IMG/VR virus record: IMGVR_UViG_3300046692_000091 | Coordinates: 248,001-312,000 of that record | Strand: one strand, 5' to 3' | DNA length: 64,000 nt | Shown here: positions 11,339 to 47,882 of the stretch, one piece after another | Position numbering within the stretch: position 1 is the stretch's first letter | How the letters are laid out: every line of letters starts with the position of its first letter | Program-made: the position numbers and the translations under genes | The notes under the pieces: generated by a model | What the model saw: only the letters and a program-made list of their open reading frames with translations | Databases searched by the model: none | Told to the model about the DNA's origin: nothing

Positions 11339-11368
11339 GAAAAAATCTCAGATCTATATTACTACTTT
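11339..11368 (+). promoter_or_regulatory. early promoter of chimallin (TATATTAC class)
   Basis: GAAAAAATCTCAGATCTATATTACTACTTT contains the phiKZ early consensus TATATTAC; exact 30-bp copy at 21564-21593. Confidence 0.85.
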
Positions 11369-11434
11369 GAATCTATCCAGCAATTGAATAGACTCTTCTT
11401 GATCAAGAAAACGAAATCGTAAAAGGAAAGCAAC

Positions 11435-13336
11435 ATGTCGGTAAATTCTAGCAAAACTGCAGCTCTGAACGTTCAGCCAACCATGGCTCCTGCTGCACCA
11501 GTAGTAACTCCACAATCCCAACCTGCTCAGGTAACACAAACAATGCAACCAGCTCTCCCAGTTTCCAATGGTATCGGTGGTCTCAACCGTACCTTCAGCC
11601 GTTCCGGTCGTGCCGATGGCAATGATGCCCGCACCACCAAGGCTTTCGTAGCATTCAGCGAAGCACAGAAAGAAGCAATCGAACAGCAAGACCTGTCGGA
11701 TACCTTCCACCTGTTCCGCTTCGACCGCACTGCTCACCAAGTAGCAATGGCGTCGATCCTGGTTCTGAAACTGGTTGATAACCGCGGTAAGCCAGCAATC
11801 CTGGTTAAAGCTCTGCCGATCGTCGATGCTTCCGCAATCGTCAAGCCGAAGACTTTCCAGATCGCTAACGGTTTCAGCACTTTCGACAAGTTCGAATCCA
11901 AGCCTGATTCCGGTGACATCTTCACTCCGCTGTACTGGGGTCGGATCGTTGCTCACGTTCGTCAAGTAACTGGTCACCCAGATGCTACCGTTTACAACGC
12001 TGGTCCACAGGACATCCACGCTGAGTTCGACTTCGAAGACAAGATTGCCGTGCGCAACCTGTTGATCAAAGCAGTTAACTCGGTTGAAGACACCATGGCT
12101 CGCCTGAGTGATGAGCGTCCGTTCTCCCTGGCTACCGACATGCAATCCGCTGACGAAATCCTGGCGGCTACCATCGACTATACCGGTACTCCGGTTGAAT
12201 CGAACACCGGTATCCCACAGCGTGCGGACATGGTCGTAAGCCTGCAGCGCCGTAAGAAGCACAGCAACCAACAGGTTCAGGAAAACGAGTACTACGATGC
12301 TGACTCTCAGCTGAACTCGGTTTCGATGTTCGTCGATCTGGAATACTCGCCTCAGCAAGTACAACAAGTCTTCGGCATGCCAGCTGGTCCACTGCCACCT
12401 CCGTTCATGCCAGCTCTGGTAATCACGGCTGTTAAGCAAGCGAACTGGATCATGGCTAACACCCCAGAAATGTACTTCTTCGCTCTGGGTAACGCATACC
12501 GTGCAACCAACGGTCAAGGCTGGGCTAAACAGTTCCTGCCAACCATCGGTCGTATCAAAGATCCACGTGACATCGGTGCTGTTGGTTACCTGACTGCAAA
12601 TGGTCTGAAAGTTGAGACCAAGTCCGAAACCTTCACCGAGCAAGACTTCGCTGGTCTGATGTTCTCCCAAGTTCAGCAGAACCCAGTCATCATGATCGAC
12701 CTGAACCGCATGGGTGATAACTCGTTCATCGAAACCATGATCATCGATTCGATGGGTGGTCCAAACGAGCAAGCTGCTAAAGCTGGCCTGGTACGTATCT
12801 TCTGCAACCTGTACGGTCGTGAGAACTTCACCTCGCTGTTCGATGTGAACAACGAATGGCTGTTCCGTCCATACGGCACCGACTTCCACCTGGGTTACTA
12901 CCCAGATGAGAATGGCGAGCGTCGTGACCGTCGTGATCTGGATACCCTGTACGCACTGAACGCATGTGATGGTGTTGTTGCAGAGTTCATGGATTGGTAC
13001 GCAGCTAAGTGCAACCCTAACGTCCACGCTGAAGTTCGTCTGAAGAAGTCGGAACAGTACGACAAGCAATACCTGGGTAACGTAACTTACGCTGGCCGTG
13101 TTACTCGTGCCATCGTCAACCCGAAACTGATCGCTGCTATGGATGCTGCACAAGCGAAAGCTGGTATCGCAGTCACCATGGACAACATCGGTTCCGTGTT
13201 CGGTGGTCAGCGCTTCCAGGGTAACGTTGGTCTGGTTGGCATGAACGTTCAAGGCATTGCCTCGGTCGCTTCCTACATCCAGAACCAAAACGTCTACGCT
13301 CCGGCAGTAGGTGGCATGACTGGTCTGATGTACTAA
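11435..13336 (+). CDS. chmA: chimallin, major phage nuclear shell protein
   Basis: 633 aa; GGLNRTFSRSG..G.DAR, FRFDR..HQV, RNLLIKAVN, TPEMYFFAL.NA, RDRRDLD, GQRF.GN align with recalled 201phi2-1 gp105/phiKZ gp54. Confidence 0.95.
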   Translation: MSVNSSKTAALNVQPTMAPAAPVVTPQSQPAQVTQTMQPALPVSNGIGGLNRTFSRSGRADGNDARTTKAFVAFSEAQKEAIEQQDLSDTFHLFRFDRTAHQVAMASILVLKLVDNRGKPAILVKALPIVDASAIVKPKTFQIANGFSTFDKFESKPDSGDIFTPLYWGRIVAHVRQVTGHPDATVYNAGPQDIHAEFDFEDKIAVRNLLIKAVNSVEDTMARLSDERPFSLATDMQSADEILAATIDYTGTPVESNTGIPQRADMVVSLQRRKKHSNQQVQENEYYDADSQLNSVSMFVDLEYSPQQVQQVFGMPAGPLPPPFMPALVITAVKQANWIMANTPEMYFFALGNAYRATNGQGWAKQFLPTIGRIKDPRDIGAVGYLTANGLKVETKSETFTEQDFAGLMFSQVQQNPVIMIDLNRMGDNSFIETMIIDSMGGPNEQAAKAGLVRIFCNLYGRENFTSLFDVNNEWLFRPYGTDFHLGYYPDENGERRDRRDLDTLYALNACDGVVAEFMDWYAAKCNPNVHAEVRLKKSEQYDKQYLGNVTYAGRVTRAIVNPKLIAAMDAAQAKAGIAVTMDNIGSVFGGQRFQGNVGLVGMNVQGIASVASYIQNQNVYAPAVGGMTGLMY

Positions 13337-13342
13337 GACCTG

Positions 13343-13452
13343 ATTAACCAGTTGGTAAATTGGTGTATTGCCGAAGCGTCACGATAAAGAGCGGAGGGAA
13401 GTTTCGTGAACGACAATACATCAGTCCAGGCTCCGTTGGTGGACTGGTTGAT
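13343..13452 (+). ncRNA. putative structured RNA element in the chimallin 3' UTR (multi-stem, possible kissing loop)
   Basis: Hand-derived pairings 13343-52/13443-52, 13362-70/13414-22, 13377-84/13404-12, 13425-28/13439-42, loop-loop 13390-96/13431-37; no family assigned. Confidence 0.5.
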
Positions 13453-13466
13453 AAGTTAGATAGGAA

Positions 13467-13502
13467 TGGCTCCCTTCGGGGAGCCACTCTTATTTCTTTT
13501 TT
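13467..13502 (+). terminator. chimallin terminator
   Basis: tggctccc-TTCG-gggagcca followed by a T-rich tract. Confidence 0.8.
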
Positions 13503-13525
13503 GTTAGTTTGTATCGAGGTATGAA

Positions 13526-15046
13526 TTGGGTCTACATGCTGAAATTGTCGATCACGATCAACTATTAGCGAGTCAACGAGGAATCGTAAAGTTCGCTAAC
13601 GATTACAATGCATCCAATACTGAGTCGAAAGAAGAGTTCCAACGAGCTCTATATTCTCACTTCGATAACGTAGATGCCATTGAAGTATCGGCTAGTTGTG
13701 AATGTGGTCATATGGACGAGGCTTATGACCTCGGCGTTGTGTGCAGTAACTGTAGTACACCTGTAGTATCCACAGCAAGCCAACCGATTGTGCCATCCAT
13801 GTGGATGCGTGCACCAGAAGGCGTTCGATCGATGATCTCTCCGGAGTTATTGATCATGTTGCTGGGACACATGCAGGGCAAGGAGTTCAACTTCCTAGCG
13901 TACTTCATGGATACGACGTATCAATTTGATGCTAATACCATTTCCTCTCGCGAAACAGATCGCAAGGTAAAGCGACTGCTGCAACAAAACATTCCACGGG
14001 GCTTGAACTATTTCATCGACAACTTCGATGCGATCATTAAGTTCTGTATGGACTGCGGTATCATTGGTACTGGCAAACATGAGTTCTATGAATTCTTGGT
14101 GCAGAATAAGCATGCCTTGTTCCCAACAGCTATTCCGATTCCAACCAAACTCTGCTTCGTCGTAGAATCCACAACATCGGGTTCCTATATCGACAAGCCT
14201 ATCGGTCCTGCGATCGATGCTGCTCTCACAATGGGTGGTATCCAACATAGCCCGATTCCACTGAAACCAATCACAGTACAGAACCGTACTGCGAAAGCAT
14301 TGTTACTCATGGCGATGTTCCATGAGAACTATAACAAGCAGCGTATCGCACAGAAGCCTGGTCTGGTTCGTCGACACGTATTGGGTGGCCGTCTCAACTT
14401 CACCGCTCGGGCAGTAATTACATCGATCAGTGCACCGCACCGTTATGATGAACTTCACATCCCATGGGGCGTTGCATGTCAGCTGTTTAAATATCACATC
14501 TTGAACAAGCTCAAGCGTCAAGGCATGACTACAATGGAAGCCCTGGGTTTCCTGTATTCGAATGTGTTGCAGTATAACGATCGGTTGAATAGTGTCTTCC
14601 TGGAACTCATCGCAGAAGCGAAAGAGATTGGTCCAGCATCCACCTTCCACCGAAATCCAACTCTGCAGCGTGGTTCTACTCAGCAGTTCTTCATCACGAA
14701 AATCAAGACAGACTTGACCGATAACTCGATCTCGATGTCCGTGCTGTGTTTGAAAGCACCTAACGCCGACTTCGATGGCGATCAGCTCAACCTGACCCTG
14801 ATGCCAGATAACTATCTGACTGATGCTACGGAACGAATCGCTCCACACACGTGGGTATTATCGATTGATGATCCACACGAAATCTCTGGTAACCTGGAAC
14901 TTCAAGGGCCAGTGGTAGAAACGATCGTGAACTATGCTCACGAAGATTATCTGGGTGCTCCTCCTGAAGCATACCGTCACTTGCTGGATGAGGAGTGGAC
15001 TGAGTTCGTTCCATTCAAGCAGGCCAAGTATGAATTCACTGGATAG
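13526..15046 (+). CDS. non-virion RNA polymerase beta'-like subunit, N-terminal/catalytic part (phiKZ gp55-like)
   Basis: NADFDGD catalytic motif, CxC...CxxC Zn site, FHRNPTLQRG; TTG start with GAGGT RBS; uninterrupted. Confidence 0.95.
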   Translation: MGLHAEIVDHDQLLASQRGIVKFANDYNASNTESKEEFQRALYSHFDNVDAIEVSASCECGHMDEAYDLGVVCSNCSTPVVSTASQPIVPSMWMRAPEGVRSMISPELLIMLLGHMQGKEFNFLAYFMDTTYQFDANTISSRETDRKVKRLLQQNIPRGLNYFIDNFDAIIKFCMDCGIIGTGKHEFYEFLVQNKHALFPTAIPIPTKLCFVVESTTSGSYIDKPIGPAIDAALTMGGIQHSPIPLKPITVQNRTAKALLLMAMFHENYNKQRIAQKPGLVRRHVLGGRLNFTARAVITSISAPHRYDELHIPWGVACQLFKYHILNKLKRQGMTTMEALGFLYSNVLQYNDRLNSVFLELIAEAKEIGPASTFHRNPTLQRGSTQQFFITKIKTDLTDNSISMSVLCLKAPNADFDGDQLNLTLMPDNYLTDATERIAPHTWVLSIDDPHEISGNLELQGPVVETIVNYAHEDYLGAPPEAYRHLLDEEWTEFVPFKQAKYEFTG

Positions 15047-20758: not shown

Positions 20759-21508
20759 ATGTCCCAAGGCAACATGCCAGCACCAATTCTGAACGCATTC
20801 TCGGTCATGTCGACCTGGCTGTACGCAGCTCCTGTTCAGGGTTCTACCAAACGTCCATCGATCCGCTTTGCTGTTCGTGGTAACGTACCGACGATCTTCA
20901 CCAAGACCGGGGTAGATGGCGATGAGAACCATGGCAAGATCGACTTCCGTATGGATCTCGCAACCTTCGCTGCGGCAATGCATTACATCAAGCAACTCGT
21001 GAACAAAGTTGAAGGTGTTCCAACCAAACGTATTTTCATCTATCAGGATGACTTCCTGGCAGGTAAGAAACTGGACAAAGTAATTCCTCTGTCCAAGTGG
21101 GAAATCGGTCGTGCACAAGACGGTCGTGTATACATGGCAGTGCTGTCTACCAAGACCAGTCGCCCACGTATCCCATTCTACTTCGGTCCATCCAAGTATC
21201 ACTCCATCCAGAATGGTGATGGTTCTGAGATCACCCCGGTAGAAATGTCTGAAGCCTATGCAATGGGTTTCATGGTCCCAGCTGAAGCAATCGTTTACAA
21301 CCTGATGGTTTCCTCGTTCGACGAGAATGCCAAGAACGTTGCTAACCCAGCCAACTTCGCTGGTGGTAGTGGCGGCGGTGGCGGTAATCGTGGCGGTAAC
21401 TTCGGTGGTGGTGGCCAACGTAGTGGCGGCAATAGCTACAGTGGCGGCGGTAGCAGCTCCCCTGCCCCAATGGCAGATGCTGGCTTCGGCGATGTAATGG
21501 ATTTCTGA
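20759..21508 (+). CDS. chmC: ChmC, phage-nucleus-associated RNA-binding protein (phiKZ gp67/PhiPA3 gp61-like)
   Basis: 249 aa, folded N-domain plus G/N/S-rich tail; directly upstream of the gp68/PicA block. Confidence 0.75.
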   Translation: MSQGNMPAPILNAFSVMSTWLYAAPVQGSTKRPSIRFAVRGNVPTIFTKTGVDGDENHGKIDFRMDLATFAAAMHYIKQLVNKVEGVPTKRIFIYQDDFLAGKKLDKVIPLSKWEIGRAQDGRVYMAVLSTKTSRPRIPFYFGPSKYHSIQNGDGSEITPVEMSEAYAMGFMVPAEAIVYNLMVSSFDENAKNVANPANFAGGSGGGGGNRGGNFGGGGQRSGGNSYSGGGSSSPAPMADAGFGDVMDF

Positions 21509-46561: not shown

Positions 46562-47882
46562 GACTGGCCAACCCGCCACCTTTAAGGATATCTTTGCTGA
46601 AGCCACTGATGGCCTGCAGCAGATTGCACCAACCACTACCCCTGATGAGGAAGTCTCTTCTGATCTGTTAGAAGATCCTATCGATTACCCAATCGAGAAT
46701 CAGGCTGAGATGGTTACACTGATCGAAGAGCCTGCCCCAATGACAACAGACGTTATTGATGGCAACCTCCAACCAGAACTAGCGATCGCTGTAGAAGCGA
46801 TTAATGATCTGCTGGATCTGCATAGCACTATTAAAGTACACGGTGTTAGTTCTCATGACATGGCTGGTCTGGTGACTATTCAGAAGCGCATGATCGACAA
46901 CAACATCGCTTTACCTAAAGCATCCTTAGAAGAGTTCACTGGTTACTTTACTCCTGAACGCTCTCTGCTAAACCAAAAGGTCAGCTTGGAGAACATCGGT
47001 AAGGTTATCCTGGACACTATCAAGGCTTGGCTGAAGAAACTGATTGACCTGGTCATGTCTGGTTATCGTTGGGTTAAAGGTCTGAAGCAGAAACACGCTG
47101 TGCTAGATGCGCAACTGGTTAAAGCTCGTGACGTACTGATGAATGTACGTAAGATCTACATCAAGATGAAAACTCTGAATGGTGTACTGGGTAGCGAAGC
47201 AGCTAAAACAATGGCCGAGCTATCGGATACCATGTTACTGACTTCCTCATTGGAACGTAACCGTGTAACACTGTATGGTTTCTCTGATGACGCAGCTCTT
47301 AAGCAAGTGAAAGGCTTGTTCGAAGAAGCTCGTACCACCAGTAAAGCAGTTGCTGCTAAGATCACACAACTCGGTTCATTGATGGGTAACCAAGAGACTC
47401 CATCGGAAGATGATCTGAATACGTTGCATGATGTTGCTCTGGTATTGAGCGGCACTGAAGAAATGCTAGCTATCTCTGATGATCCTAATTATCTCCTGAC
47501 TAACCTCGGTAGTGACTTCTGGGATAAAGTAGAGAAGTTCCGTAGTGCCCAGATTATCGACTTCGATGACATGGTTAAACATTACGGTTCTGCTGCTGAT
47601 GCACTGGCTCGTATTCGTTCGATCAAAATCGAAGACCCACAACAAGCAGAATTTGCTCAGTCGGTTATCGATTCTATCACGACTGCGGTTGGTCGGTTGA
47701 ATACTATCATTAGTTTCTTCAACACAGCTGCCCAGTCACAAGTACGTGCCGCCAAGACTTATCGCGAGTACTACTCTAGCGCTATCGAGATCTTGCTGTT
47801 GGACTTCAAATCTAAGTCTCCTTCATCGGATTCTGTAAAAGAGATGAAGAAGATGATTGCTGAACTGCAATTGTTGAAATGA
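46545..47882 (+). CDS. inner-head protein paralog (phiKZ internal-protein-like)
   Basis: Acidic propeptide, ASLEE/VSLEN cleavage-type motifs, amphipathic IK.W.KKLI helix. Confidence 0.65.
   Translation: MDQELETGQPATFKDIFAEATDGLQQIAPTTTPDEEVSSDLLEDPIDYPIENQAEMVTLIEEPAPMTTDVIDGNLQPELAIAVEAINDLLDLHSTIKVHGVSSHDMAGLVTIQKRMIDNNIALPKASLEEFTGYFTPERSLLNQKVSLENIGKVILDTIKAWLKKLIDLVMSGYRWVKGLKQKHAVLDAQLVKARDVLMNVRKIYIKMKTLNGVLGSEAAKTMAELSDTMLLTSSLERNRVTLYGFSDDAALKQVKGLFEEARTTSKAVAAKITQLGSLMGNQETPSEDDLNTLHDVALVLSGTEEMLAISDDPNYLLTNLGSDFWDKVEKFRSAQIIDFDDMVKHYGSAADALARIRSIKIEDPQQAEFAQSVIDSITTAVGRLNTIISFFNTAAQSQVRAAKTYREYYSSAIEILLLDFKSKSPSSDSVKEMKKMIAELQLLK

What the first reader, a model, noticed from the sequence alone, without database searches (positions are those of the whole stretch)
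13343..13452. Pseudoknot-capable ~110-nt RNA element between the chimallin stop codon and its terminator
In an otherwise tightly packed genome, ~130 nt are kept before the terminator, and they fold by hand into a closed multi-stem structure. P1 is ATTAACCAGT/ACTGGTTGAT (10 bp). P2 is GGTGTATTG/CAATACATC (9 bp). P3 is CGTCACGA/TCGTGAACG with a 19-nt purine-rich loop. P4 is (CAG)TCCA/TGGA(CTG). The P3 loop AGCGGAG (13390-96) is complementary to the P4 loop CTCCGTT (13431-37), giving a kissing-loop pseudoknot. The extended P4 competes with P1 for 13443-45, so it could act as a switch. It matches no RNA family I can place. Hypothesis: a cis 'zip code' or stability element that directs chimallin mRNA to the growing shell (for example via ChmC), a processed sRNA, or a new ribozyme or riboswitch class.
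Basis: partly seen in the sequence, partly recalled or inferred. Interest (0 to 1): 0.75.

Follow-up and report, generated by a model that had tools for sequence, protein, structure and literature searches.

The report
Conserved folded RNA after chimallin gene
The ~110 bases between the phage-nucleus shell gene (chimallin) and its terminator encode a genuinely conserved, folded non-coding RNA that is also present in phiKZ, belongs to no described RNA family, and has no demonstrated function.

Summary
The element (13343-13452, + strand) is homologous to the 3'-most domain of the chmA/RNA-polymerase-beta intergenic RNA of phiKZ-like and PS119XW-like Pseudomonas jumbo phages.

- **Covariation:** in 12 distinct copies, P1, P2 and P3 stay paired (95% of cells) through 16 pairs changed on both sides. 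Between the window and phiKZ the stems are only 44% identical, but loops and junctions are 84% identical.
- **Strand:** the G-U pattern points to the chmA-sense RNA.
- **Pseudoknot:** P4 and both "kissing" loops are invariant. Their 7-bp complementarity beats about 99.3% of shuffles, but covariation cannot test it.
- **Identity:** no Rfam family, no tRNA, no conserved ORF, and one copy per genome.
- **Relatives:** D6 and RVTF4 keep only a mini hairpin. Other close relatives carry unrelated, equally well-folded three-way-junction modules at the same site.
- **Expression:** phiKZ RNA-seq contigs contain the element. A published PhiPA3 ChmC eCLIP study noted peaks in this intergenic region.

Function is unproven. 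My best guess is a cis-acting structural module at the leaky terminator between chmA and the polymerase gene. The rivals are a protein-bound RNA and a switch.

The parts
11435..13336 (+). chmA (chimallin / nuclear shell protein) CDS, stop TAA 13334-36
   Evidence: PHROG phrog_4795 'nuclear shell protein', E 1.3e-146. ORF list.
13343..13352 (+). P1 5' strand (ATTAACCAGT)
   Evidence: Pairs with 13443-52. 8 of 10 pairs changed on both sides across lineages.
13353..13361 (+). Junction J1/2. TGGTAAA (13353-59) is invariant in all 15 copies.
   Evidence: Alignment A5.
13362..13370 (+). P2 5' strand (GGTGTATTG)
   Evidence: Pairs with 13414-22. Four pairs are swapped with full compensation in the 92%-identical relative L098. 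The window-type register was checked.
13371..13376 (+). Asymmetric internal loop (CCGAAG) opposite A13413
   Evidence: Sequence is variable apart from the C at 13372.
13377..13384 (+). P3 5' strand (CGTCACGA)
   Evidence: Pairs with 13404-12 with one bulged A. 100% paired; 3 pairs changed on both sides.
13385..13403 (+). P3 apical loop L3. GAGCGGAGG (13389-97) is invariant. 13390-96 is the proposed kissing strand and contains a Shine-Dalgarno-like GGAGG.
13404..13412 (+). P3 3' strand (TCGTGAACG)
13414..13422 (+). P2 3' strand (CAATACATC)
13426..13442 (+). P4 hairpin CCA/TGG with 11-nt loop L4. The whole 17-mer CCAGGCTCCGTTGGTGG is invariant. 13431-37 is the proposed kissing strand.
   Evidence: RNAalifold picks the alternative register CCAG/TTGG. 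A possible extension 13423-25 / 13443-45 competes with the top of P1.
13443..13452 (+). P1 3' strand (ACTGGTTGAT)
   Evidence: This strand survives in phage D6, where the interior of the element is absent.
13458..13503 (+). Intrinsic terminator: outer stem 13458-65 / 13488-95, core stem 13467-74 / 13479-86 with a TTCG loop, then a T-run
   Evidence: The core is conserved in all relatives whether or not they carry the element.
13526..15046 (+). Non-virion RNA polymerase beta-subunit gene (TTG start, GAGG Shine-Dalgarno at 13516-19). It starts about 23 nt after the T-run, with no room for a promoter of its own.
   Evidence: PHROG phrog_2987, E 3.2e-168. No sigma-70-like promoter found. The start is conserved in relatives.

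Best explanation
Shown: the element is an autonomously folding, about 110-nt non-coding RNA domain on the chmA-sense strand. It is a P1-closed three-way junction carrying one long arm (P2-P3) and one short hairpin (P4). It sits in the chmA 3' UTR, 5 nt upstream of the extended intrinsic terminator. It is one lineage-specific member of a set of interchangeable structured modules that occupy this site in phiKZ-related Pseudomonas jumbo phages.

Inferred:
1. The invariant loops L3 and L4 form a 7-bp kissing interaction. Together with the invariant junction strand UGGUAAA, this locks the domain into a compact tertiary fold.
2. The domain acts in cis on the chmA / polymerase-beta early transcript. 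It is a stable structural block next to a leaky terminator. It protects and defines the 3' end of the very abundant chmA message. It also keeps terminator folding, and decay of the two cistrons, independent of each other. This helps set a high ChmA to low polymerase-subunit expression ratio.
3. Because any compact stable fold can do this job, modules are lost, shrunk to a mini hairpin, or swapped by recombination between the two conserved flanking genes.

My confidence that the structured RNA is real and conserved is about 0.9. The 0.4 given as confidence refers to the cis-structural function.
For: Anatomy:
- The stems are present.
- Covariation is strong in P1, P2 and P3.
- Stems are 44% identical and loops/junctions 84% identical between the window and phiKZ.
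- 43 G-U cells make the + strand 93.5% paired, against 84% for the - strand.
- A 1-nt indel in L3 among near-identical phages rules out the overlapping ORFs.
- There is one copy per genome, always at this site.

Kissing loops: -11.3 kcal/mol, matched by 0.6-0.7% of controls.

Cis-structural role:
- Every relative examined has some stem-loop at this position, from 4-5 bp mini hairpins (D6, RVTF4, L035, L061) to 100-500-nt modules.
- The unrelated modules of phages that are 93-99% identical in the polymerase subunit mostly fold as P1-closed three-way junctions with z -3.6 to -6.4.
- No conserved trans target was found in either the window's genome or phiKZ.
- The polymerase gene starts about 23 nt after the T-run with no promoter.
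- In 201phi2-1 no promoter was found for the homologous subunit. The nearest early promoter lies about 3 kb upstream (PMC11512511).
- phiKZ gene 54 is described as part of a six-gene operon (PMC8244752).
- phiKZ RNA-seq contigs from four studies run from chmA through the element and terminator into gene 55.
Against: - No stability, processing or termination data exist for this element. The RNA-seq evidence is at contig level only, and DNA carry-over cannot be excluded.
- A generic roadblock would not need invariant loops and an invariant junction strand over a divergence that has scrambled the stems. That pattern also fits a specific partner, either protein or RNA.
- D6, RVTF4 and more distant relatives do without any large module, so the effect must be dispensable or modest.
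- Frequent cassette replacement among near-identical phages could instead reflect diversifying selection, for example an arms race.
Confidence: 0.4

Rival explanations
1. It is a protein-binding RNA, either within the mRNA or as a stable 3'-UTR-derived small RNA. The invariant loops and junction are the recognition surface for a phage or host protein: ChmC, another nucleus- or ribosome-associated factor, Hfq or RsmA. Possible roles are mRNA export or localisation, translation control or sequestration.
For: - L3, L4/P4 and J1/2 are invariant while the stems diverge.
- PhiPA3 ChmC eCLIP shows high coverage peaks between chmA (gp53) and gp54. The authors read these as a small regulatory RNA bound by ChmC (PMC11077065).
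- phiKZ is known to make a 3'-UTR-derived ncRNA from gene 298 (PMC8545117).
- L3 carries GGAGG/GGA, and a long U-tail follows the terminator.
- The window encodes a ChmC homologue at 20759-21508.
Against: - ChmC showed no sequence motif and bound mostly near start codons.
- PhiPA3 does not carry this module, only a P2/P3-like hairpin elsewhere in its intergenic RNA.
- Close relatives carry unrelated modules or none, so a dedicated partner would have to be dispensable or co-vary.
- Grad-seq inspection of phiKZ did not flag this region.
- The complex prediction was not folded.
Confidence: 0.25
2. It is a conditional attenuator or riboswitch-like switch. Alternative junction or loop pairings, with or without a ligand or factor, change termination efficiency and hence read-through into the polymerase beta-subunit gene.
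For: - It is a three-way junction with a loop-loop contact directly upstream of an intrinsic terminator, followed by a promoter-less essential gene. This is the same overall layout as purine riboswitches.
- Columns 13443-45 can pair with 13350-52 (P1) or 13423-25 (extended P4). Both partners co-vary with them, and the two conformers are within 1.4 kcal/mol of each other in the window.
- The L4 sequence GGCTCC equals the terminator's 5' arm, so it could in principle pair with the 3' arm.
Against: - The forced L4/terminator antiterminator costs about 18 kcal/mol.
- P1 sequences differ completely between lineages, with no conserved complement in the terminator.
- The middle pair of the extended P4 is broken in 4 of 12 sequences, and the covariation rests on one split.
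- There is no Rfam aptamer match.
- D6 and RVTF4 have the same terminator and gene without the element.
Confidence: 0.1
3. It is a cassette under diversifying selection or selfish turnover. The structured modules at this site would be RNA decoys or triggers in phage-host or phage-phage conflict, or mobile or neutral insertions whose structure serves their own persistence rather than chmA expression.
For: - Six or more unrelated contents occur at this one site among phages 93-99% identical in the flanking polymerase gene.
- A 330-nt non-coding module is shared at this site between a P. syringae phage (Psa21) and a P. aeruginosa phage (phiHQ).
- The element has a patchy distribution across lineages.
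- The site lies on the earliest, most abundant transcript.
Against: - There is one copy per genome, with no repeats or target-site duplications and no associated mobility gene.
- Stems have diverged to the level of the flanks (44% identity), which argues for old vertical inheritance rather than recent transfer.
- There is no match to known RNA anti-defence elements in Rfam.
- Modules B and C have no matches elsewhere.
Confidence: 0.1
4. It is a tRNA-like or RNase-recognition signal. P1 stacked on P4 would mimic an acceptor/T-arm minihelix, or the junction would be an RNase E/III/P site. Cleavage there would separate the chmA message from the downstream cistron.
For: - The topology resembles a tRNA without a D stem: P1, an 8-9-nt strand with an invariant GG, a long arm, a 3-nt linker, a short arm, and then the P1 3' strand with no linker.
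- In one phiKZ RNA-seq run the assembly breaks at the 5' edge of the element.
Against: - ARAGORN finds no tRNA or tmRNA.
- There is no T-loop or CCA sequence.
- The P4 loop is 11 nt and its stem 3-4 bp.
- The contig break occurs in one of four runs and has other possible causes.
Confidence: 0.05
5. It is a self-cleaving ribozyme.
For: Only the compact pseudoknotted architecture and the phage context.
Against: No hit to any ribozyme family in Rfam 15, even at E<=10. RNA-seq contigs run through it uninterrupted in three of four runs.
Confidence: 0.02

Closest known systems
The uncharacterised chmA(gp53)-gp54 intergenic RNA peak in PhiPA3 ChmC eCLIP (Enustun et al. 2024, PMC11077065)
   Same: Same genomic position: chmA 3' UTR upstream of the polymerase beta-subunit gene. 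PhiPA3's intergenic RNA shares its 5' domain with phiKZ and contains a P2/P3-like hairpin with the same internal-loop sequence.
   Different: PhiPA3 lacks this module as such; the covariance model finds only the hairpin (19 bits). The paper gives no structure, family or function.
Purine-riboswitch-type three-way-junction aptamers (Rfam RF00167 and relatives)
   Same: A P1-closed three-way junction whose two hairpin loops can kiss, a conserved junction strand, and a position directly upstream of an intrinsic terminator and a gene.
   Different: No covariance-model match. The arms are very unequal. There is no conserved P1/terminator alternative pairing. It lies in a 3' UTR or intercistronic position, and close relatives lack it.
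3'-UTR-derived small RNAs, e.g. the ~100-nt PHIKZ298 3'-UTR ncRNA (Gerovac et al. 2021, PMC8545117)
   Same: A structured RNA between a stop codon and the gene's own terminator in a phiKZ-type phage, with no promoter of its own.
   Different: No evidence yet that this one accumulates separately. It has a much more elaborate fold, and no conserved single-stranded seed or trans target.
Intercistronic or 3' mRNA stabiliser structures (REP/BIME elements such as malE-malF) and viral exonuclease-resistant RNAs (flavivirus xrRNA)
   Same: Stable structures in a 3' UTR or between cistrons that set differential mRNA stability. xrRNAs are also three-way junctions locked by pseudoknots. This comparison rests on established knowledge of those systems, not on a test here.
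   Different: Single copy, whereas REPs are repeated. No sequence or model similarity. xrRNAs block a 5'-3' exonuclease, an enzyme type not known in Pseudomonas. Nuclease resistance was not tested.

Membership tests
Any Rfam 15 family (4227 covariance models) | Score at or above the family's gathering threshold | tested here: not met
   The best hits are L20_leader at 18.4 bits (threshold 58.7) and ToxI at 17.1 bits (threshold 50), with E 0.8-3.3. Nothing better appears in the phiKZ-like, PS119XW, Psa21 or Phabio intergenic regions. No gathering-level hit anywhere in the window.
tRNA / tmRNA / tRNA-like structure | Cloverleaf with T-loop and anticodon arm detectable by ARAGORN | tested here: not met
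   0 genes in the 64-kb window.
Riboswitch (aptamer plus expression platform) | Conserved mutually exclusive pairing between aptamer and terminator | tested here: not met
   P1 strands differ completely between lineages, with no terminator complement. The forced L4/terminator pairing is 18 kcal/mol worse than the MFE.
Riboswitch (aptamer plus expression platform) | Ligand-dependent structural change | not testable with these tools
   Needs in-line probing or ITC.
Self-cleaving ribozymes / group I intron | Match to a catalytic-core model; self-cleavage or splicing | tested here: not met
   No Rfam hit. The chmA C-terminus and stop codon are identical in phages with and without the element. RNA contigs retain it. 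Cleavage itself was not assayed.
3'-UTR-derived regulatory sRNA | Lies between a stop codon and the gene's own intrinsic terminator | tested here: met
3'-UTR-derived regulatory sRNA | Accumulates as a discrete processed species with a conserved seed and targets | tested here: inconclusive
   Only contig-level RNA-seq was available. No conserved target was found in the window's genome or phiKZ. Host targets were not searched.
Proposed new family: chmA 3'-UTR three-way-junction element (window, L019, L098, PS119XW group, phiKZ group) | P1, P2 and P3 maintained by compensatory changes | tested here: met
   8, 5 and 3 pairs changed on both sides. 94.7% paired, against 24-51% for slid controls. Independent RNAalifold prediction agrees.
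Proposed new family: chmA 3'-UTR three-way-junction element | Invariant UGGUAAA junction, GAGCGGAGG loop and CCAGGCUCCGUUGGUGG hairpin; position immediately 5' of the chmA terminator | tested here: met
Proposed new family: chmA 3'-UTR three-way-junction element | L3-L4 kissing pseudoknot | tested here: inconclusive
   7 bp, invariant in all copies. The complementarity is matched by 0.6-0.7% of controls. No covariation is available.

The most novel reading that the evidence does not exclude
The chmA 3' UTR of nucleus-forming jumbo phages is a dedicated, fast-evolving slot for compact RNA modules, and these modules act as specific signals rather than passive structure. One possibility is that they are recognised by the nucleus-associated RNA-binding protein ChmC or by the shell/export machinery, to route or anchor the chimallin message. 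Another is that they serve as RNA decoys against host RNA-sensing defences. In either case the invariant kissing-loop surface of this element would be the recognition site, and cassette swapping would reflect an arms race.
Probability: 0.15. Interest if true: 0.9.

Novelty: new variant of a known kind. Interest (0 to 1): 0.62.

Why it matters
Chimallin is the first and most abundant product of nucleus-forming jumbo phages, and its dosage and timing decide whether the infection is protected. A conserved folded RNA attached to its message is present in the model phage phiKZ and in therapy-related phages such as OMKO1 and PA7. It is absent from Rfam and has been overlooked in four phiKZ-type transcriptome studies, so it adds an RNA layer to this biology.

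phiKZ is now genetically tractable (Cas13a selection, antisense oligomers, Tn-seq), so the element can be deleted, swapped or mutated directly. Nature has already supplied controls: relatives with no module, a mini hairpin, or unrelated modules at the same site.

The work also corrects annotation. Several GenBank records place hypothetical proteins on this RNA.

Tried and rejected
- **Rfam** at permissive E-values on the window region and on four relatives' intergenic regions, and at gathering level on the whole window: nothing.
- **ARAGORN:** nothing.
- **Pattern scans** of viral, metagenome and genome collections with the two invariant loops. These gave mostly chance hits in coding DNA (L010-L018, L099-L112). 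The true members were L014, L016/L019 and L098.
- **Covariance model with filters off** on Psa21, Phabio, D6, RVTF4, 201phi2-1, L020, L027, L028 and L068. No member was found, only the PhiPA3 hairpin.
- **Exact-pattern search for phiKZ itself** in viral contigs: absent.
- **Trans-target search** with both loops against the window's genome and phiKZ: only the self-antisense, with no shared target.
- **RNA-seq for the window's own phage:** only metagenomic DNA runs exist. phiKZ runs are held as contigs, so no ends or local depth were available.
- **Supplementary tables** of the transcriptome papers are not held.
- **BLAST of modules B and C** against GenBank phages: no match.
- **Stop-codon read-through or frameshift stimulator:** rejected, because the element lies 6 nt from the stop here, about 80 nt in L019 and about 210 nt in phiKZ.
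- **Small ORFs** 13360-13524 (+) and 13344-13487 (-): rejected because of the 1-nt indel among close relatives and the non-coding substitution pattern.
- **A first gene-gap script** timed out.

Full report
**Context.** The window is part of a 314.8-kb virus record. ORF 11435-13336 (+) is the nuclear shell protein chimallin (PHROG E 1e-146). ORF 13526-15046 (+) is the non-virion RNA polymerase beta subunit (E 3e-168). Between them lie 189 nt. The terminator has an extended stem (13458-65 / 13488-95), a core stem (13467-74 / 13479-86) with a TTCG loop, and a T-run. The nearest GenBank relatives are Pseudomonas phages Psa21 and D6 (83-86% nt identity), then RVTF4, the PS119XW group, Phabio and phiKZ-like phages. 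The source is a rhizosphere metagenome.

**Check of the observation.** Every stem and the loop-loop complementarity is present at the coordinates given. The MFE fold reproduces P1, P2, P3 and a P4. On its own this is weak, with z = -1.64 for the element (z = -3.7 once the terminator is included). No Rfam family matches, and there is no tRNA.

**Homologues.** BLAST with the element alone hit the same intergenic position in phiKZ-like and PS119XW-like phages. Alignment showed that the element corresponds to the 3'-most ~120 nt of their ~390-nt chmA/polymerase-beta intergenic region. I built a covariance model from six copies. It finds exactly one copy per genome, always here:
- the window;
- L019, an IMG/VR genome 99% identical in the polymerase subunit;
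- L098, a metagenome contig 92% identical;
- the PS119XW group (PS119XW, phiHQ, HPP-Temi);
- the phiKZ group (phiKZ, KTN4, SL2, PA7, W10-2, 124.01, FBPa36, PA02, LC).

The polymerase subunit of the window is only 58% identical in protein to that of SL2, so these lineages are far apart.

**Covariation.** On the 12 distinct sequences, 94.7% of pair cells are standard pairs, against 24-51% when the 3' partners are slid. 16 pairs show changes on both sides, and 0 of 500 shuffles reach the observed score.
- P1 has 8 of 10 pairs changed on both sides, P2 has 5 of 10, and P3 has 3 of 8.
- RNAalifold, which did not know my structure, recovers P1, inner P2 and P3, and adds two pairs to P3.
- L098 differs from the window at 13 of 110 element positions. 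Eight of these are four fully compensated pairs in P2 (13366-69 with 13415-18).
- Within the phiKZ group one P2 pair runs U-A, G-U, G-C.
- Window and phiKZ are 44% identical in the P1-P3 stems but 84% identical in loops, junctions and P4. This is the classic signature of a structural RNA.
- 43 G-U cells make the + strand 93.5% paired, against 84% for the complement. The functional molecule is therefore the chmA-sense RNA.
- A 1-nt indel in L3 between the window and its closest relatives excludes the overlapping small ORFs.

**What is not settled in the anatomy.** Three segments never vary: UGGUAAA in J1/2, GAGCGGAGG in L3, and the 17-mer CCAGGCUCCGUUGGUGG (P4 plus L4). The proposed 7-bp L3-L4 kissing helix is thus always possible but never tested by evolution. 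Its stability (-11.3 kcal/mol) is matched by only 0.6-0.7% of shuffled or random loop pairs. I rate it likely but unproven. Columns 13443-45 can pair with 13350-52 or with 13423-25, and both partners co-vary with them. The two conformers differ by 1.4 kcal/mol in the window. However, this rests on one lineage split, and the middle pair fails in 4 of 12 sequences.

**Surroundings and relatives without the element.**
- D6 and RVTF4 go from the stop codon through a mini hairpin straight to the same terminator. D6 has ACCA-ATAG-TGGT, reusing the P1 3' strand. RVTF4 has TAATC-TTCG-GATTA.
- More distant Pseudomonas relatives (L031-L037, L061) have only 20-40 nt there. Several of them (L033, L035, L036, L061) show a small hairpin.
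- Phages 93-99% identical to the window in the polymerase subunit carry unrelated sequences at the same spot. L019 has an extra 72-nt hairpin. L020-23 and L026 carry 'module B', L025 'module C', and Psa21 a 350-nt 'module D'.
- Module D is shared at about 70% identity with the P. aeruginosa phage phiHQ, where it replaces the phiKZ-type 5' domain.
- 201phi2-1, Phabio, L028 and L068 share yet another motif.
- These modules are all strongly folded (z -3.6 to -6.4) and mostly P1-closed three-way junctions. The phiKZ 5' domain also shows compensatory pairs.
- PhiPA3 has a P2/P3-like hairpin with the same internal loop but a different apical loop, placed in its 5' domain.

The site is therefore a slot that always holds some stem-loop, from 4 bp to about 500 nt, with modules lost, expanded or exchanged. 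Because the element's stems have diverged as far as the flanking genes, I read it as old and vertically kept in three lineages, not recently transferred.

**Expression.** No RNA-seq exists for the window's phage. For phiKZ, Logan contigs from four RNA-seq runs in four studies span chmA, the intergenic RNA with the element, the terminator, and the start of gene 55. In three runs this is a single contig. In the fourth the assembly breaks at the 5' edge of the element. This shows presence in RNA libraries, but not ends or abundance, and DNA carry-over cannot be excluded.

**Literature.**
- phiKZ gene 54 is described as part of a six-gene operon with early and middle promoters (PMC8244752).
- In 201phi2-1 no promoter was found for the homologous polymerase subunit, and the nearest early promoter lies about 3 kb upstream (PMC11512511).
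- Gene 55 is essential (bioRxiv 10.1101/2025.11.23.690004).
- Grad-seq found two other phiKZ ncRNAs but not this one (PMC8545117).
- ChmC eCLIP in PhiPA3 noted unexplained high-coverage peaks between chmA and gp54 and suggested a small RNA bound by ChmC (PMC11077065).
- I found no paper that describes the structure.

**Mechanism.** Shown: a conserved, autonomously folding three-way-junction RNA on the chmA transcript, immediately 5' of a terminator that must be read through to express an essential polymerase subunit. Inferred: the loops kiss to give a compact fold, and the domain works in cis as a structural block. It protects and defines the 3' end of the abundant chmA message. It also insulates terminator folding and cistron decay.

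The main argument is that unrelated modules of mostly the same topology, or a mini hairpin, substitute for it in close relatives. In addition, no trans target is conserved. The main counter-argument is the invariance of loops and junction, which equally fits a specific partner. I therefore give the cis-structural role 0.4, an RNP or sRNA role 0.25, a switch 0.1, a conflict or selfish cassette 0.1, a processing signal 0.05 and a ribozyme 0.02. A riboswitch-type platform is disfavoured. There is no conserved P1/terminator alternative, and an L4/terminator antiterminator costs 18 kcal/mol.

**Comparison and novelty.** Functionally it resembles 3'-UTR or intercistronic stabiliser structures and, in topology, purine-riboswitch-type junctions and xrRNAs. 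It is a member of none of them: the Rfam, ARAGORN and alternative-pairing tests were not met. It is best filed as a new structured-RNA family, restricted so far to Phikzvirus, Pawinskivirus-like and Tepukevirus-like phages. It is also part of a previously undescribed variable RNA-module slot in the chimallin 3' UTR.

Noticed in passing
L019:2245-2316; L020:2315-2436; L025:2296-2434; L026:2336-2436; L001:938-1372; L002:938-1024 (all homologous to window 13337-13457): The chmA 3' UTR is a hypervariable slot. Phages 93-99% identical to the window in the flanking polymerase gene carry at least six unrelated contents there. All are strongly folded (z -3.6 to -6.4) and most are P1-closed three-way junctions.
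   Followed up: partly
L001:938-1290 (Psa21) and L115:72-400 (phiHQ): A ~330-nt non-coding module is shared at about 70% identity between a P. syringae phage and a P. aeruginosa phage at the same site. The minus-strand 'hypothetical protein' annotated on it in Psa21 (gp057) has no conserved ORF in phiHQ and is probably spurious.
   Followed up: partly
L114:444-632 (HPP-Temi HSP1_CDS0381); several phiKZ-like records: GenBank records annotate 'hypothetical protein' CDSs directly on the conserved RNA element. The compensatory substitution pattern and indels argue that they are not genes.
   Followed up: partly
L113:211-417 (phiKZ 47529-47735) and homologues in SL2, PS119XW and PhiPA3: The 5' two-thirds of the phiKZ intergenic RNA also fold into conserved domains: a multi-stem domain plus the hairpin GATCAC...GTGATC. 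Five pairs are compensated between the phiKZ and PS119XW groups. PhiPA3 has an expanded version.
   Followed up: partly
L073:1628-1790 (201phi2-1), L030, L028, L068: A further shared 3'-UTR motif, CCTAAATACTGG(A/C)TAAA, together with the hairpin GGGATCGAAAGGTCCC, follows chimallin in the 201phi2-1 and Phabio-like phages.
   Followed up: no
L014:173-200 (phiKZ-type, run X34): In one of four phiKZ RNA-seq runs the Logan assembly breaks exactly at the 5' boundary of the element. This could be a variant, or an abundant RNA end.
   Followed up: no
window 13467-13486 vs L098: The terminator stem also shows changes on both arms between the window and L098 (13467 with 13485-86). Its outer stem, AGATAGGA/TCTTATTT, explains the conserved 'AGATAGG' spacer.
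   Followed up: partly
window 11354-13288 (-): A 644-aa shadow ORF antisense to chimallin is longer than chimallin itself (633 aa). A naive longest-ORF caller picks the wrong strand.
   Followed up: yes
window 20759-21508 (+): Homologue of the nucleus-associated RNA-binding protein ChmC, 69% identical to PhiPA3 gp61 over residues 7-200, with a Gly-rich tail.
   Followed up: partly
window 13526: The polymerase beta-subunit gene uses a TTG start in the window, Psa21, D6 and RVTF4, where phiKZ-type phages have ATG. It lies about 23 nt after the chmA terminator's T-run, with no promoter-like site.
   Followed up: partly
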